Of a stretch of DNA of 64,000 nt, positions 9,516 to 30,695 are shown piece by piece. Position numbers and translations under genes: made by a program. The notes under the pieces are model-generated. The model was not told the DNA's origin and did no database searches. It was given only the letters and a program-made list of their open reading frames with translations. Each line of letters begins with the position of its first letter. Positions within the stretch are counted from its first letter, which is position 1. This DNA is from Octopus sinensis (Eukaryota): positions 49,228,001 through 49,292,000 of the forward strand of contig NC_043000.1 in the NCBI RefSeq assembly GCF_006345805.1. Reading direction: 5' to 3'.

Positions 9516-10340
9516 ATGTAGCATTAGCTAAATAATCTCTTAAGGTTTTTAAACTTGACGAGGCTTGTTCACTCAAAAGAAAATATTTAGTATCAACCAA
9601 CGGTTTTATCTTGACAGAGAATTTTAGAATCCATTTGAAATAATACGCAAATAGACCAACAATTCGACTCAATGCTTTGTGGGTACTAGGAATAGGTAGT
9701 TCTAGTAAGGGCTTTTTCCGGTTAGGGTCAGGTTTCAAGTTACCATTTTGAATTTCATAGCCAAGCAATCGAATCAGTGTAGTGCTGTAAATGCATTTTG
9801 CATCATTAAAAGTTAAAATTACAGTCTTTAGCAACTTGAAGAAAATGTTTTAAATTTTGATCATGTTCTTTCTTCGATTTACCACGCACATTGTTATGCT
9901 GTCGATATATGCAAAAATAGCTCTACAATTATGATTCTTGATTATATTATCGATCACTCTCTGGAAACAGGGCACTGCGTTTGTAAGTCCGAAAGCGATA
10001 CGTTTGCTTTGATACAATTTTCCCTGTGCTTCGAAAGCCGGGTAAGGTCGATCTTCAACTGGAATCTCAACTTGATGATACGCACTTTTGAGATCCAGTG
10101 TGCTAAAATAATTAAATTGAGCTATTTTTGTGACCATGTCATGCATATTTGGCAGTGAATATCCATCTAATTGTGTAAACTTATTTATAATCTCGCTATA
10201 ACCAATACACAGGCTCTTGCGATGATTTTCTCCTGATATTACCAATACCTGGTCTCGCCAGGGAGAAACACTAGGTTCAATTACCCCTTCTGCCAGATCT
10301 CGGCTTATATTACCAGCAATAAATTTTTCATTATTGGCGG
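9514..10340 (-). pseudogene. Gypsy reverse transcriptase, frameshifted
   Basis: Motifs IEPSVSPW, FSTLDLKSAYHQV, FGLTNAVPCFQRVID, AYIDSITMC (9898-9909 = YIDS) and TTLIRLLGYEI are present. Confidence 0.92.
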
Positions 10341-10479
10341 ACTGTCTTCTCGATTTCGTAACTATGGTTTTACAGTTAAAGTTTAAATTTTCAAACAACC
10401 TCGGTGTAATGTCACTTTTAATGCAACTTAGAGCTCCCAAATGTAACAGTGGATTGTCACCGTCAAAGGTAATTTGTAC

Positions 10480-10790
10480 ATGTTGATGGTGTTTTAAGAA
10501 ATTTTGTCCTAACATTATATATACAAACAAATTATCAAGTACTACCAGCTTTACTTGCACGTAAATTCTTCTTTGAAGTTCAATTGAACCCATACAATAA
10601 CCGTCGATTTGGGAACGACTTCCATTGACAGCCATGTTAATTTCATTCCTTTCGGACTTCACCAGCATTTTTTTTTTGCAATGTCTTTGCTAATATAGTA
10701 GAGCCGGTATCAATCAAAGCAAATGCTTTCATGCCATCGACTAATTTTATAATTAACTTTAGTAGCAGCTCAACCTTGACATAAAACTAC
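10480..10790 (-). pseudogene. Retroviral-type aspartic protease remnant
   Basis: Reverse complement of 10697-10720 encodes ALIDTGST. IMLGQNFLK follows downstream in ORF 9850-10668. The two parts are separated by a frameshift in a poly-A run near 10670. Confidence 0.8.
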
Positions 10791-25309: not shown

Positions 25310-26000
25310 TCTAAGATATTTTTGTGGGACGTTGAGGTGTAAATTTGAACCTTGTTGAGTTAAGAAGGATTTTGTATCTTTTATCTGTTCTGTATTGTCC
25401 TTTTTTGTTTTAAGGCTTCTGCAAAATTTGATCTGTTTTTGTTGTTGTTTTTGCTGGTGGTGGTGGTGATGGTGGTGGTTGGGTGGGGGTCGAAGAGGTG
25501 GTAGTTGTAGCTGCAGAAGTTGTAGTAGTAGTGTTGGTTTTTGCGGCAGAGTTAAAGTTTTTAATGGCGGTAATGGTGGTTGGCTTTGCGACATTATTTT
25601 TATTGTTGTTGTTGTTGTTTTTGCTGGTGGTGGTGGTGATGGTGGTGGTTGGGTGGGGGTCGAAGAGGTGGTAGTTGTAGCTGCAGAAGTTGTAGTAGTA
25701 GTGTTGGTTTTTGCGGCAGAGTTAAAGTTTTTAATGGCGGTAATGGTGGTTGGCTTTGCGACATTATTTTTATTGTTGTTGTTGTTGTTTTTGGTGGTGG
25801 TGGTGGTGGTTGCAGTGGTGATGGTGGTGGTGGTGGTAGCGGCGTTCAAGCTGTCAGCCTCAGCCACTAATCTTTTCAATCCGTCATTGTCAATAATAGC
25901 GCTGAGATCTGTATTATGCCTTTCTCAACTTTTGCTTTCATTCGTTTTATATGTGTGTGCATGAATTAAGTGTTTTTGGTAGCGGGAGGCTAAGAAATTA
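25310..26000 (-). pseudogene. Putative LINE ORF1 N-terminal remnant with Thr/Pro-rich low-complexity linker
   Basis: SAIIDNDGLKRLVAEAD, then a T/P-rich tract, then NFAEALKQK and TEQIKDTKSFLTQQGSNLHLNVPQKYL in shifted frames. The ORF1 identity is inferred from position, not from a clear domain. Confidence 0.45.
25441..25790. repeat. Perfect 170-bp tandem duplication
   Basis: 25441-25610 equals 25611-25780; for example gggtgggggtcgaagagg occurs at 25481 and 25651. Confidence 0.92.
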
Positions 26001-26284
26001 TTCATGGGTTGTTTTTAGCGCCTCACTACAGTTCCGCATGACTTGCGCTGGCCTCGTGGTTTGCAATCGCCATTTTCGAAATGAGAATGGCTAAAATGAA
26101 CCGAAGAAAGCCTTCAAAATTTTTTCTATGAAAATATTAATCAACGTTGAAAGCGTATGTTGTTTGACAACTTTTTCACACAAAATACTTAACAATGAAA
26201 ACTCAAAACACACAAAATACACAAAAATTCACAGAAACACACAAAAATAGCCATCTTAAATAGAGCCGAAAACATTTGTCGAAA

Positions 26285-27925
26285 TTTATGATGATGTTTG
26301 TCGAATGTATTTGATGAAAAAGTTTGCTGAAAATGTATGATGAAAATGTCTGCTGAAGATGAATATATTTGATGAAAATCTTTGTTGAAAATGTTTGATG
26401 TATATATTTGGTGAAAATGTTTGAGGAAAATGTTTAAATAAAACGTTTGATAAAAATGTTTGATAAAAATATTTGATGAAAATCTTTCATGACAATGTTT
26501 AATGAACATCTTTGATGAAAATGTTTGATGAAAATGTATGATAAAAATGTTTGATGAAAATGTATGATAAAAATGTTTGATGAAAATATTTGATGAAAAT
26601 ATCTGATGAAAACGTTTGATGAAAATGTCTGAAGAAAATATTTCATGAAAATGTTCGATGAAAATGTTTGATGAAAATGAAAATGTCTGATGATTTTGAA
26701 AATGTCTGATGAAAATGTTTGATGAAAATGAAAATGTTTGATGAAAATCTCTGATGAAAATGTTTGAGGAAAATGTCTGATGAGAAAATATCTGATGAAA
26801 ATGAAAATGTCTGATGAAAATGTTTGATGAAAATGTCTGATGAAAATGTTTGATGAAAATGTTTGATGAAAATGAAAATATTTGATGTCTGACGAAAATG
26901 TTTCATGAAAATGAAAATGTTTGATGAAAATGAAAATATCTGATGAAAATGTCTGATGAAAATGTTTGATGAAAATGTCTGATGAAAATGTTTCATGAAA
27001 AAGTTTGATGGACTTCAAAATGTTTGATGAAAATGAAAATGTTTGATGAAAATGTTTGATGAAAATGAAAATGATGAAAATGTTTGATGAAAATATCTGA
27101 TGAAAATGTTTGATGAAAATGCTTGATGAAAATGAAAATGTCTGATGAAAATGTTTGATGAAAATGTCTTATGAAAATGTTTGATGAAAATGTCTGACGA
27201 AAATGTTTGATGAAAATGTCTTATGAAAATGTTTGATGAAAATGAAAATGTCTTATGAAAATGTTTGATGAAAATATCAGATGAAAATGTTTGGTGAAAA
27301 TGTTTGATGAAAATGAAAATGTCTGATGAAAATGTCTGATGAAAGTAAAAATATGTGATGAAAATGTTTGATGAAAATGAAAATGTTTGATGAAAATGTC
27401 TAACGGAAATGTTTGATGAAAATGAAAATATCTGAGGAAAATGTCTGATGAAAATTTTTGATGAAAATGTTTGATGATAATAGAAATGTCTGACGAAAAT
27501 GTTTGATGAAAATGAAAATGTTTGATGAAAATATTTGATGAAAATGCATGATGAAAATGTCTGACGAAAATGTTTGATGAAAATGTTTGATGAAAATGAA
27601 AATATCTGATGAAAATGTTCGATGAAAAGGAAAATGTTTGATGAAAATGTCTGATGACATTTGTTTGATGAAAAGGTTTGATGAAAATATTTCATGAAAA
27701 TGTTCGATGAAAATCTTTGATGAAATTTAAAATGTCTGCAGAAAATATTTGATGAAAATGTCTGATGAAAATGTCTGAAGAAAACGTTTGATGAAAATGT
27801 TTGATGAAAATATTTCATGAAAATGTTTGATGAAAATTAAAATGTCTGAAGAAAATATTTGATGAAAATGTCTGATGAAAATGTTTGATGTAAATGTTTG
27901 ATGAAATTGTTTGATGAAAATTTTT
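26285..27925. repeat. 13-bp satellite, AAAATGT(T/C)TGATG, ~1.65 kb, with 6-bp AAAATG insertion variants
   Basis: Direct inspection. The units are more degenerate at the 26285-26520 end. Confidence 0.97.
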
Positions 27926-28146
27926 GATAGATAGATAGATATAGATAGAAGGACGGACTGATGGACAGACATACAGACAGACAGACAGGCAGGCAAACAG
28001 GCAGGCAGACAGGCAGGCAGGCAGGCAGGCAGTGCTGTCCATCAGTCCGTCCTTCTATCTATATCTATCTATCTATCAAACATTTTCATCAAACATTTTC
28101 ATCAGACATTTTCATTAGACATTTTCATCAAACATTTTCATCAAAC
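27923..28146. repeat. Foldback: perfect 46-bp inverted repeat around a (GACA)/(GGCA) loop, continuing as ~5 inverted satellite units
   Basis: 27923-27968 is the exact reverse complement of 28035-28080. 28081-28146 is the satellite in the opposite orientation. Confidence 0.93.
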
Positions 28147-28349
28147 AAAAGTTGATGATTCCAAAGTAATCTGCTCCCAACGAAGCTGATCCGGACTAAA
28201 AAGTGCACTTTTTGAGGATACTTTGGAAACGTGTACAAGATACTCACAAGGAAGTTTGTTTGGAATGTTGAAGCTATATGTAAATTTAATGATTCAGTTA
28301 ACCGGCACAATCACAGCCCCTGAGACTCGGAACTGAAAACGCCATAGTA

Positions 28350-28814
28350 AAGAGAGTTATAATGTTTATTCACAAAATGTTGCAGTATGATGCAGATTAT
28401 CATCAAAAGGATTAATTGGGCCATTCTTATTTCTATATGAAACAGTGATTGTTCCATTTATTTGAACTTAGTGCAACAGTCTGTCATGCCAATCATTGAA
28501 GTGGACTTTGAAGATGTGGAATCATATTTATAGCAAGAAAAGGCAACACCACACACTACAGTAGTAATGGAAGAGCCTGCCTTAGTGAGATTTTGGCAAA
28601 AAAGGTGGAATGAACGAAGCTTAGTAGAATACCCACCGTGCTCACTGGACCGTACACCAATCCATTTCTTTTGGGGATACTTAAAATATAAAGTTTATGG
28701 TATAAAACCGGTAACAGTCGGCACTTTGAGAGCAGCTTGTGAACGAGAATGCTTATAAATACTGACCGAAATGTTTATTGGTATTTGCGATACCATTGTT
28801 TCGAACTATTAGCA
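28350..28814 (+). mobile_element. Tc1/mariner DD41D-like transposase fragment (pseudogene)
   Basis: LSSKGLIGPFLF...*QEKATPH...EYPPCSLDRTPIHFFWGYLKYKVYGIKP...LRAACEREC. The positions equivalent to the second and third D (28537 and 28663) are 126 nt apart, which is DD41D spacing. Confidence 0.8.
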
Positions 28815-29092
28815 TTTTTGATGATGTTTGTTGAATATATTTGATGAAAATGTTTGATGATAATGTCTGATGAAAATATCTGATGACGAATGTTTGACGA
28901 ATGTGTCAGAGGAACATGTCTGATGAAAATGCTTGATGAAAATGTATGATGAAAATGTTTGATGAAAATGTTTGATGAAAATGAAAATGTTTGATGATAA
29001 TGTCTGATGAAAATATCTGATGAAAATGTTTGATGAACATGTCTGATGAAAATGTCTGATGAAAATGTTTGATAAAAATGTTTGATGAAATA
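28815..29092. repeat. 278-bp block of the 13-bp satellite inserted between 17-bp direct repeats
   Basis: gtttcgaactattagca occurs at 28798-28814 and 29093-29109. Confidence 0.92.
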
Positions 29093-29111
29093 GTTTCGAA
29101 CTATTAGCAGT

Positions 29112-29207
29112 GCCGCTATGTAGTATTGCGATATAACATAGACACATATGAAAATACATAATTCAGTAGAAATAAACTCTAATTAAGTAGTTTGCTAAAT
29201 TCTTCTT
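29112..29207 (+). repeat. 96-bp exact direct repeat, copy 1
   Basis: gccgctatgtagtattgcg...gctaaattcttctt is identical to 32060-32155. Confidence 0.93.
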
Positions 29208-29260
29208 AGAGCGGTTGTCAGTTTGGAAAATGAGATTCATAAAAGAATGAAATTGTCTAC

Positions 29261-29660
29261 AGGTGCAGGCGTGAATGTGCGATAAGAAGCTTGCTGCCAG
29301 CAAAAATGGTTTGAGATTGACTCCCACAGCGTGGCACCTTGGTCAAGTGTTTTCTACGATAGCTTCGGGCCGATCAAAGCCTTACGAGTGGATTCGGTAG
29401 ACGGAAAATGAAAGAGTGAGTGTATGTGTGTGTGTGTATGTGTGTGTGTCTGTGTCTGTGTGTATTTCCCCATCACTGCTTGACTGCCCGTGTTAGTGTG
29501 TTTATGTCGCCCGTAATTTAACAGTTCGGCAAAAGAGAACGATAGAATGAGTACTAGGCTTATAAAAAAAGGGCTGAGGCCAATTTGTTCGATAAAAAAC
29601 CCTTCAAGGCGGTGCCTAGCATGGCCCGATTCAAATGAATGATACAAGTAAAAGATAAAC
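29261..29660 (+). mobile_element. SINE family A, diverged
   Basis: aggtgcaggcgtgaatgtgcgataagaagcttgc...gtggattcggtagacggaaa, (TG)n, cagttcggcaaaagagaacgatag...ggcggtgcctagcatggcc. Confidence 0.8.
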
Positions 29661-29747
29661 GATAGATTCTATTAAACTTCGTAAATGAAATATATTTTAA
29701 TAAACATGGACTTCATAGTCATACAATATGTGTTTAATGTACTGCAT

Positions 29748-30132
29748 GTGGAGGCGCAATGGCCTAGTGGTTAGGGCAGCGGACTCACGGTCGTATGATC
29801 GCGGTTTCGATTCCCAGACCGGGCGTTGTGAGTGTTTATTGAGCGAAAACACCTAAAGCTCCACGAGGCTCCGGCAGGGGATGGTGGTGATCCCTGCTGT
29901 ACTCTTTCACCACAACTTTCTCTCACTCTTACTTCCTGTTTCTGTTGTACCTGTATTTCAAAGGGCCGGCCTTGTCACTCTCTGTGTCACGCTGAATATC
30001 CCCGAGAACTACGTTAAGGGTACACGTGTCTGTGGAGTGCTCAGCCACTTACACGTTAATTTCACGAGCAGGCTGTTCCGTTGATCAAATCAACCGGAAC
30101 CCTCGTCGTCGTAACCGACGGAGTGCTTCCAC
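29748..30132 (+). mobile_element. SINE family D (tRNA-derived head plus tail X), young copy with 12-bp TSD
   Basis: A-box tggcctagtgg and B-box ggtttcgattccc. TSD aatgtactgcat at 29736-29747 and 30133-30144. Confidence 0.93.
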
Positions 30133-30404
30133 AATGTACTGCATATATTACATTATATTATGACGTAACAATAAGCTTTGTAAACTTTTCAACTTAAATC
30201 ACTGTCAATATGCACCCACGCTAATACACACACATACACACAGTTACACACACACAAACACATGCATATTTATTCAGATGATACACGTATCTAGACATAC
30301 GCGCACTCGATGACCATTGAAACATCTCAAGCTGTAATAGTTTAGTGTTTAGATTGATTTACTCATCTATCTATCCTGCACAGAAAGTAGTTACTTGTGC
30401 CTAT

Positions 30405-30695
30405 GTGCGTGCGTCTATGTATGTGTGTGTATCTGCGTGTGTGTGTGTGCGTGTGTGTGTATGTGTGTGTGTGCGTGTGCGTATGTGTTTGTGTGTCTGT
30501 GCCGGTCCTCAACCATCGCTTGACGAACCATATGGGTGTGTTTATTTCACTGTATCTTTGCGGTTCGGTAACACTGACCGATAGCATAAGTACTAGGTTT
30601 ACTATATAAGTACTGGGGTCGATTCACTGGACCAAAATTCCTCAAGGAGTGACACCAGCATGACCGCAGTCTAATGACTAAAACAAGTAAAAGAA
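30405..30695 (+). mobile_element. SINE family A, 3' half
   Basis: (TG)n followed by gcggttcggtaacactgaccgatag...gtactggggtcgattc...cagcatgaccgcagtctaatgact. Confidence 0.7.

What the first reader, a model, noticed from the sequence alone, without database searches (positions are those of the whole stretch)
28798..29109. A satellite block that moved: 278 bp inserted into a mariner with a perfect 17-bp TSD
The block interrupts the transposase remnant and is flanked by identical gtttcgaactattagca repeats, a length typical of target-primed reverse transcription. Its minus-strand 3' end (catcaaatatattcaacaaacatcatcaaaaa) matches the distinctive last unit of the big array at 26285-26320, just before the LINE UTR. 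Its 5' end starts mid-unit, as expected for 5' truncation. Inference: satellite RNA ending at the array/UTR border was retrotransposed. The terminal A5 may be templated (ATAAA in the array). Alternative: templated insertion from the nearby array during break repair.
Basis: partly seen in the sequence, partly recalled or inferred. Interest (0 to 1): 0.75.

Follow-up and report, generated by a model that had tools for sequence, protein, structure and literature searches.

The report
Satellite block inserted with target duplication
A 278-bp piece of a 13-bp satellite really was pasted into an old mariner transposon with a 17-bp duplication of the target, and a second such block exists on another chromosome. 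The evidence fits break-repair copying next to resident arrays at least as well as reverse transcription of satellite RNA.

Summary
A 278-bp block (28815-29092) of the 13-bp satellite sits between two exact 17-bp copies (28798-28814, 29093-29109). Fifteen paralogous mariner copies run straight through a single copy of that site, and contigs from four public runs bridge the junctions.

- The T5/A5 end is fully templated. The "terminal" unit lies inside arrays at other loci.
- There is no tail. The 17-bp TSD and its target differ from the AT-rich 8-12-bp TSDs of four neighbouring SINE copies.
The adjacent array matches at no more than 83% and lacks the block's diagnostic variants.

I examined about 30 blocks of this roughly 33-locus family and found one more TSD-flanked block, on C1:139.29 Mb (286 bp, exact 25-bp TSD). 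The two blocks share three features:
- Each lies about 0.87 kb downstream of another block, in the same orientation.
- Each has 1-5 nt of junction microhomology.
- Each holds a whole number of units.

Fold-back junctions recur in this family. My best reading (0.45) is microhomology-primed copying of an ectopic, possibly circular, satellite DNA template during break or replication repair beside a resident array. LINE-type target-primed reverse transcription remains a serious rival (0.3). This is a new variant of known satellite-dispersal events.

The parts
28798..28814 (+). Left copy of the 17-bp target-site duplication (mariner sequence)
   Evidence: Exact repeat; only two copies in the window. 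A single copy at the homologous site in 15 mariner paralogs.
28815..29092 (+). Inserted 278-bp satellite block. It has two ~139-bp halves about 87% alike. It starts inside the marker variant and ends after GATGAAATA.
   Evidence: The internal part 28857-28962 is covered by an exact X1 contig whose depth matches that of the unique flanks.
29093..29109 (+). Right copy of the 17-bp TSD. Its first 4 nt (GTTT) are what the satellite would continue with, so they count as microhomology.
28150..28797 (+). Tc1/mariner transposase remnant, part A. It is 5'-truncated by about 520 bp where it abuts the inverted mini-array.
   Evidence: Paralog alignments start at 28147-28179. The 5' 520 bp shared by the paralogs is absent from the window. 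Translation.
29110..29257 (+). Mariner remnant, part B (3' region), continuing after the TSD.
   Evidence: Alignment to paralogs.
29663..29737 (+). Mariner 3' end, resuming after a SINE insertion.
   Evidence: 77-90% matches to paralog ends.
26269..27928 (+). Resident large array of the same satellite, about 125 degenerate units. The marker variant lies at its left end (26279-26316). It ends 886 bp upstream of the inserted block, in the same orientation.
27858..28145 (.). Fold-back: 111-nt arms (27858-27968 and 28035-28145), 94% complementary, with a 66-nt tetranucleotide-repeat spacer. It includes the inverted mini-array 28075-28147.
25977..26268 (+). Its paralogs end in a (GATA)n-type tail. 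Here the last ~35 bp are missing, and the satellite array begins at the point of truncation.
   Evidence: None of the 19 paralogous copies fetched (L066-L084) carries a satellite block.
29258..29662 (+). Very abundant SINE-like repeat, also inserted in the mariner remnant. It is not part of the satellite event.
   Evidence: Read depth is up to about 3 million against about 150 for unique flanks. Copies are present in many loci, mostly in (TA)n.
29736..30144 (+). tRNA-derived SINE (29748-30132) with a 12-bp TSD (29736-29747 and 30133-30144). Used as the local yardstick for TPRT footprints.

Best explanation
The block is a one-off, transposition-like copy of about 21 satellite units. I read it as placed by DNA repair or replication, not by a polyadenylated RNA.

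Proposed course (inferred):
1. A break or collapsed fork arose in the mariner remnant, about 0.9 kb downstream of a resident array.
2. Resection exposed that array as single-stranded DNA. It paired with an ectopic satellite template, either another array or a small satellite circle of about 280 bp.
3. The non-homologous 3' end (..TTAGCA) primed on that template through 1 nt of microhomology and copied about 278 nt.
4. The new end (..GATGAAATA) re-annealed through GTTT to the original template, 17 nt behind the point of departure. That left the 17-bp duplication.

The same process made the 286-bp block with a 25-bp duplication on C1.

Shown: the insertion, the empty site, the perfect TSDs, the microhomologies, proximity to and shared orientation with a neighbouring block, non-identity to that neighbour, whole-unit length, and recurrent fold-back junctions.

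Inferred: a DNA rather than RNA template, a possibly circular template, and a repair context.
For: - The insertion and empty site are proven and the junctions are seen in reads.
- A second TSD-flanked block lies at L094 338-623, with exact 25-bp repeats at 313-337 and 624-648.
- Both blocks lie 886 bp and 864 bp downstream of another block of the family, in the same orientation. The family has only about 33 loci in 2.7 Gb, so chance proximity is negligible.
- Neither block is a close copy of its neighbour: at most 83% and about 89%. A 35-mer diagnostic variant is absent from the adjacent array. So the template was ectopic.
- Junction microhomology is A and GTTT in the window, and AAAA(A) and TG on C1.
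- Both blocks start and end at unit phase 7/8, so each holds a whole number of units within 0-1 nt. Sizes are 278 and 286 bp. This meets the eccDNA-reintegration criterion of Sproul et al. 2020 (PMC7403614).
- DNA-level rearrangement marks the locus and the family. There is a fold-back 27858-28145 with 94% arms beside a truncated mariner. Forward/reverse junctions occur at L088, L091, L039, L004 and L059.
- There is no tail. The T5 is templated.
- A precedent exists. Drosophila Rsp-like blocks inserted at microhomology into existing satellite clusters, four of them with a 32-bp flanking duplication.
Against: - Variable long TSDs (17 and 25 bp) are the classic footprint of LINE endonuclease and TPRT. 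Template switching predicts deletions as often as duplications at the return point.
- No donor with 93% identity or more was found anywhere in the assembly (best 87.6%). Nearly every block matches the same consensus-like C7 array best. The source is therefore unknown.
- No eccDNA or RNA data were available.
- Phase closure has a chance probability of about 0.05 for the two blocks. Only 5 of 16 non-TSD blocks show it.
- The sample is two events.
Confidence: 0.45

Rival explanations
1. Target-primed reverse transcription of a satellite transcript by a LINE enzyme. The endonuclease makes nicks 17 nt apart (25 nt on C1). The nicked strand primes on satellite RNA by microhomology, and the copy is 5'-truncated. 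If this is true, forward-strand RNA fits better, with 4-nt GUUU priming. The reader's minus-strand RNA ending in A5 fits worse; I give that version about 0.1 of the total.
For: - There are two perfect TSDs of variable, long length.
- The genome is full of tail-less SINEs with clean TSDs, one 650 bp away.
- 2-4 nt of microhomology lies at the forward-strand 3' junctions.
- Another agent's unchecked note reports a TSD-flanked concatemer of RTE 3' ends in this genome (s1-105993).
Against: - There is no untemplated A-run or LINE-type tail.
- The target is not AT-rich and the TSD is longer than the 8-12 bp of four SINE copies, which all start A[AT]T. The abundant SINE targets (TA)n.
- The primer end ..AGCA has no complementarity to an A5 end.
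- Both events lie about 0.87 kb from a resident block, which trans retroposition does not predict.
- 28 of about 30 blocks have no TSD.
- Satellite RNA was not shown.
Confidence: 0.3
2. Physical capture, by end joining, of a linear or linearised circular satellite DNA fragment at a staggered double-strand break. Fill-in of the overhangs gives the TSD.
For: - Whole-unit length and similar sizes (278 and 286 bp) fit a discrete extrachromosomal fragment.
- Satellite eccDNA is documented in insects and human cells.
Against: - End joining normally leaves small deletions, not 17-25-bp duplications.
- It needs an unexplained nuclease to make 3'-overhang staggers.
- It does not explain proximity to, or shared orientation with, the neighbouring block.
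Confidence: 0.1
3. One reading: the 278 bp were copied from the adjacent big array itself during local break repair.
For: - The block has the same orientation as the array and lies 886 bp away.
- The locus carries a fold-back and a truncated mariner.
- The marker variant also lies at the big array's left end.
Against: - The best match within the adjacent array is 83% and no segment stands out.
- The block's 35-mer variant is absent there at up to 2 mismatches, and its marker differs at 2 of 27 positions.
- The fold-back arms are still 94% alike, so the array has not turned over enough to erase a donor.
- 17% divergence gives about a 4% chance of an intact 17-bp TSD (my calculation).
- On C1 the neighbour (186 bp) is shorter than the insert.
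Confidence: 0.08
4. Assembly artefact or chance repeat.
For: Satellites are error-prone in assemblies.
Against: - Independent contigs from four runs and at least three studies bridge the junctions.
- The 17-mer is not expected by chance.
- The paralog empty site is clean.
Confidence: 0.02

Closest known systems
Rsp-like satellite insertions into 1.688 clusters, Drosophila simulans clade (Sproul et al. 2020, PMC7403614)
   Same: - Short satellite blocks appear at new sites next to existing satellite clusters.
- Junctions fall at 4-7 nt microhomology.
- Some carry a 32-bp duplication of flanking sequence.
- In some, the first and last truncated monomers add up to one monomer, which the authors read as eccDNA reintegration.
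- MMEJ, FoSTeS/MMBIR, and SDSA with an interlocus template switch were proposed.
   Different: - Here the block sits in non-satellite DNA (a mariner remnant, or unique DNA on C1) about 0.87 kb from a block of the same satellite.
- The duplications are pure target sequence of 17 and 25 bp.
- The unit is 13 bp and the animal is a cephalopod.
- Only two events are known and there are no eccDNA data.
Dispersed alpha-satellite repeats in human euchromatin (Feliciello et al. 2020, PMC7719264)
   Same: - Unique insertions of satellite fragments occur, often inside transposons.
- Short duplications lie at most insertion sites.
- An eccDNA-mediated model was proposed.
   Different: - Those duplications are 2-10 bp and are read as homology shared between satellite and target.
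- Here only 1-5 nt are shared and the duplication is 17-25 bp of target.
LINE-mediated retrocopies (processed pseudogenes, SINEs; TPRT)
   Same: - Clean TSDs of variable length within the 7-25 bp range.
- Truncated copies.
- Microhomology at junctions.
   Different: - No poly(A) or LINE-type 3' tail.
- The target is unlike local SINE targets.
- The insertions cluster beside resident arrays.
- An RNA intermediate is not shown.
MMBIR/FoSTeS templated insertions (Lee 2007 and Hastings 2009, as cited in PMC7403614)
   Same: - Microhomology at both junctions.
- A short duplication at the return point.
- Neighbouring inversion or fold-back and truncation.
   Different: - The template is not the nearby sequence.
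- The insert holds a whole number of repeat units.
TSD-flanked concatemer of RTE 3' ends in the same genome (scan note s1-105993, unchecked)
   Same: A tandem block between perfect target duplications in this genome.
   Different: - Its units are LINE 3' ends, which are legitimate RT templates, and its TSD is 10 bp.
- The present satellite has no LINE-derived part.

Membership tests
LINE/TPRT retrocopy | Target-site duplication of variable length, about 7-20+ bp | tested here: met
   17 bp exact, with the empty site seen in paralogs. The second block has 25 bp exact.
LINE/TPRT retrocopy | 3' poly(A) or LINE-specific 3' tail next to the TSD | tested here: not met
   The T5/A5 is part of the satellite marker variant in L003, L004 and L038. 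The other end is mid-unit. There is no (GATA)n or SINE-type end.
LINE/TPRT retrocopy | Nick-site preference like other TPRT insertions of the genome | tested here: inconclusive
   Four tRNA-SINE copies have 8-12-bp TSDs that start A[AT]T in AT-rich DNA. The abundant SINE sits in (TA)n. The satellite TSDs start GTTTCG and TGAATC on the forward strand. The sample is small and other LINE families were not tested.
LINE/TPRT retrocopy | RNA intermediate (transcribed source) | not testable with these tools
   No RNA run held the stretch.
eccDNA / microhomology-mediated satellite insertion | Microhomology between satellite and target at the junctions | tested here: met
   Window: A and GTTT. C1: AAAA(A) and TG.
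eccDNA / microhomology-mediated satellite insertion | First and last truncated monomers together make one monomer | tested here: met
   Both blocks start and end at phase 7/8 of the unit, closing within 0-1 nt. The chance is about 0.05 for both.
eccDNA / microhomology-mediated satellite insertion | Satellite present as extrachromosomal circles | not testable with these tools
   No eccDNA data were available.
MMBIR/FoSTeS local templated insertion | Insert is a near-exact copy of nearby sequence | tested here: not met
   At most 83% to the adjacent array, and the diagnostic 35-mer is absent. On C1 the match to the neighbour is about 89%.
MMBIR/FoSTeS local templated insertion | Further template-switch scars nearby (inversions, truncations) | tested here: met
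   A fold-back with 111-nt arms lies at 27858-28145, and the mariner is truncated at about 28150. The C1 block holds a 29-nt inverted segment.
DNA transposon or MITE carrying internal tandem repeats | Terminal inverted repeats, conserved ends and a fixed TSD length | tested here: not met
   The block ends are plain satellite units with no TIR. Array flanks are unrelated across loci. TSD lengths are 17 and 25 bp.
Helitron/Helentron-borne satellite | No TSD, conserved Helitron termini flanking the array | tested here: not met
   A TSD is present and there are no shared termini. The only lead is 2.5 units beside a Helitron-type helicase ORF in L090.
Tc1/mariner (host element) | Transposase with the PPYSPDL..DFxLF..LK region, and many dispersed paralogs | tested here: met
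   Translation shows YPPCSLDRTPIHFFWGYLK. At least 40 copies at 70-78% identity. Pfam gives only a weak HTH_Tnp_Tc3_2 hit in a paralog.

The most novel reading that the evidence does not exclude
This satellite spreads by a dedicated short-range route. Small circles of about 280 nt (two higher-order units; DNA, or RNA read by a LINE reverse transcriptase) are copied for exactly one lap from a staggered nick made within about 1 kb of a resident array. Each event gives a whole-unit block with a 17-25-bp TSD. That would be a transposition-like life cycle for a satellite with no coding capacity.
Probability: 0.15. Interest if true: 0.75.

Novelty: new variant of a known kind. Interest (0 to 1): 0.45.

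Why it matters
How satellite DNA reaches new chromosomal sites is still largely inferred from ambiguous junctions. Here the host is a multi-copy transposon, so the empty site can be read directly. That makes the insertion and its 17-bp duplication unambiguous.

A second event has the same size, the same phase closure and the same position relative to a resident block. Together they suggest a repeatable mechanism rather than an accident. If the pattern holds in population or long-read data, it would give a testable model for short-range seeding of new arrays. It would also give a way to separate RNA-based from DNA-based satellite movement in a cephalopod genome.

Tried and rejected
- **Array as a tail of the upstream retroelement.** None of the 19 paralogous copies fetched carries a satellite block, and those whose 3' end was read carry a (GATA)n-type tail.
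- **Donor search.** BLAST of the block and exact or near-exact searches for two diagnostic variants found no donor. The best hit (C7, 87.6%) proved to be a consensus effect, because nearly all blocks match C7 best.
- **A single 'ATAG' at the right junction as the remnant of a (GATA)n tail.** The right end of the big array matches the block no better than its other parts (82%). I dropped this idea.
- **First TSD scan.** It missed even the positive control because of boundary errors. I redid it with wider windows and a satellite mask.
- **A 10-bp repeat around L085 and (TA)n or ATT repeats around L086 and L092.** These are at chance level or low complexity.
- **Rfam scan of 25500-30500.** It gave only a sub-threshold snoRNA-like hit (25 bits against a cut-off of 48) and no ribozyme.
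- **Empty allele.** No joint skipping 28815-29109 was among the listed joints, but 29 joints were not shown.
- **Scan notes for this place.** None were on record.
- **Genome fetches.** Smaller fetches worked. The ends of the largest arrays (C1:36.7 Mb, C4:46 Mb, C14, C17, C4:102 Mb) were not examined.
- **C1 block.** I could not check it in reads or by paralogs.

Full report
**Observation**

The 278 bp between them are units of the 13-bp satellite TTTGATGAAAATG.

The host sequence is a degenerate Tc1/mariner transposase remnant. It has at least 40 dispersed paralogs at 70-78% identity, and its translation shows the YPPCSLDRTPIHFFWGYLK region. I aligned a reconstruction with the block and one repeat copy removed against 15 paralogs. 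They run straight through a single homologous 17-mer and continue with GTGCC. So this is a true insertion with a target-site duplication.

Contigs from four public runs, labelled as four organisms, bridge the junctions:
- The left junction is bridged in X1, X3 and X4.
- The right junction is bridged in X3, X4 and X5, with 31 nt of satellite, the TSD and 5 nt of flank.
- No empty-site joint was listed, but not all joints were shown.

**The family**

The assembly is 2.7 Gb. Other agents' notes call it Octopus sinensis; I did not verify this. Exact-pattern and BLAST searches place the satellite at about 33 loci of 0.1-20 kb on many chromosomes. Flanks differ between loci and there are no shared transposon ends.

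The block's left end does match the first units of the big array: a 27-mer with 2 differences, one of only four such sites in the genome. The other two sites lie inside arrays on C3 and C4:46 Mb. There the unit is preceded by CGAAATTTTT, as it also is in L038.

Three points follow:
- The unit is a higher-order-repeat variant, not a terminal unit.
- The block begins inside it, 14-20 bp short of the big array's edge.
- The T5 (A5 on the minus strand) is fully templated, so there is no untemplated tail.

The primer end that a minus-strand RNA would need (..AGCA) has no complementarity to an A-run.

The 'LINE UTR' is indeed the 3' region of a retroelement whose paralogs end in a (GATA)n-type tail. 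None of the 19 paralogous copies fetched carries a satellite block.

**Local yardstick for TPRT**

The tRNA-derived SINE at 29748-30132 has a 12-bp TSD. Three other copies have TSDs of 8, 10 and 11 bp. All start A[AT]T in AT-rich DNA and have no tail. The very abundant SINE at 29258-29662 sits in (TA)n at other loci. The satellite TSD is longer and its nick sites are not AT-rich. This is weak evidence (n = 4), but it does not favour the dominant LINE partners.

**Donor**

- The best match in the adjacent array is 83% and no segment stands out.
- A 35-mer variant that occurs twice in the block is absent from that array at up to 2 mismatches.
- A 38-mer of the block is unique in the genome, and an exact X1 contig over that part has the same depth as the unique flanks.
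- The nearby fold-back arms (27858-27968 and 28035-28145) are still 94% alike. The array has therefore not turned over enough to erase a donor.

The best genome-wide match (C7:111.48 Mb, 87.6%) is not a donor signal, because almost every block of the family matches that consensus-like array best. With 0 differences in 42 bp of TSD across both events, the insertions should be less than about 7% diverged from a surviving donor (my calculation). None is in the assembly.

**A second event**

My first TSD scan missed the positive control. I repaired it and scanned about 30 blocks whose two ends I could read. Apart from low-complexity or chance-level repeats, one more clean case appeared. At C1:139.29 Mb a 286-bp block (L094 338-623) lies between exact 25-bp repeats at L094 313-337 and 624-648. 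Its flank is unique, so no paralog test is possible.

The two TSD-flanked blocks share several features:
- Their sizes are 278 and 286 bp.
- Junction microhomology is A and GTTT in the window, and AAAA(A) and TG on C1.
- Both ends of each block fall at phase 7/8 of the unit. Each block is therefore a whole number of units within 0-1 nt. Sproul et al. take this pattern as a sign of eccDNA reintegration.
- Each lies 886 or 864 bp downstream of another block of the satellite, in the same orientation. Neither is a close copy of that neighbour: at most 83% in the window and about 89% on C1.

With about 33 loci in 2.7 Gb, chance proximity is negligible. The C1 case was found without regard to neighbours.

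**DNA-level instability**

The mariner remnant is truncated by about 520 bp exactly where it meets an inverted mini-array that forms the fold-back. Forward/reverse junctions of this satellite recur at L088, L091, L039, L004 and L059. The C1 block itself contains a 29-nt inverted segment.

**Interpretation**

TPRT explains the long, variable TSDs but nothing else. There is no tail, the targets are atypical, proximity to resident arrays is unexplained, and no RNA was shown.

A repair or replication model explains more:
1. A lesion arises within resection distance of a resident array.
2. The exposed array pairs with an ectopic or circular satellite template.
3. The non-homologous 3' end primes by microhomology and copies about 280 nt.
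4. It returns 17-25 nt behind the point of departure.

This accounts for the proximity, the shared orientation, the ectopic sequence, the microhomology, the whole-unit length and the surrounding fold-backs. It matches mechanisms proposed for Drosophila Rsp-like insertions, some of which carry a 32-bp flanking duplication. It also extends the 2-10-bp duplications seen at human alpha-satellite insertions.

The model has three weaknesses. It does not predict duplications over deletions. The donor is unknown. Only two events are known.

My probabilities are:
- 0.45 for the DNA-template model.
- 0.30 for TPRT.
- 0.10 for fragment capture.
- 0.08 for copying from the adjacent array.
- 0.02 for an artefact.

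**Novelty**

This is a new variant of a known kind of event. It is a cleanly proven satellite insertion with long target duplications in a cephalopod, and it shows a recurrent position relative to resident blocks. It is of moderate interest. The decisive data (population long reads, Circle-seq, strand-specific RNA) were out of reach here.

Noticed in passing
window 27858-28145; also L088 474-622, L091 443-601, L039 1254-1789, L004 5-691: Fold-back (forward/reverse) junctions of the 13-bp satellite recur at five or more loci. In the window the 111-nt arms are 94% alike around a 66-nt (CAGG/CAGA)n spacer.
   Followed up: partly
window 29115-29207: Contigs from all four runs also hold a form in which these 93 bp are replaced by TCTTGC, alongside the reference form. 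This is either an allele or an unassembled paralogue.
   Followed up: no
window 29748-30132 (TSDs 29736-29747 and 30133-30144): A young tRNA-derived SINE, 95% identical to other copies, with a 12-bp TSD and no A-tail. Other copies have 8-11-bp TSDs at AT-rich sites.
   Followed up: partly
window 29258-29662: A hyper-abundant SINE-like repeat. Summed contig depth is about 3 million against about 150 for unique DNA. It has an internal (GT)n, and at other loci it sits mostly in (TA)n, once inside a satellite array (L049).
   Followed up: partly
L090 527-560 (G000:C26:20.826 Mb): Two and a half perfect satellite units abut the start of a Helitron-type (Pif1-like, GGTGKS) helicase ORF. This could be the origin of the 13-bp unit. 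Scan notes report other Helitron-born satellites in this genome.
   Followed up: no
window 25434-25808 and 25977-26268: A 170-bp tandem repeat (2.2 copies, 99% alike) rich in TGG/TGT lies upstream of the retroelement's 3' region. Paralogs share the (TGG)n stretch and end in (GATA)n, (CAGA)n or (CATA)n tails.
   Followed up: partly
window 29011-29070: A sub-threshold Rfam hit to a C/D-box snoRNA (25 bits against a cut-off of 48). The satellite unit contains TGATGA and CTGA, which resemble C and D boxes. This is probably chance.
   Followed up: no
window 28817-29098 (read depths): Summed satellite depth relative to unique flanks is far higher in run X5 (organism D) than in X1. This hints at large differences in copy number between samples. 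Contig depths are a poor measure.
   Followed up: no
L038 2531-2620 and L004 1865-2000; L058 1200-1292 and L100 380-523: Some arrays share their neighbour repeats. A CCTCGGAACTTTCCAG-type repeat lies right of the arrays on C10 and C4:46 Mb. A GGTTTGAACCGG-type repeat lies beside the arrays on C11044 and C9:58.6 Mb. L054 and L092 share a left junction in (ATT)n.
   Followed up: no
window 9850-10668 (-): An ORF with a reverse-transcriptase domain (Pfam RVT_1, E = 2e-12), belonging to a retroelement elsewhere in the window.
   Followed up: no
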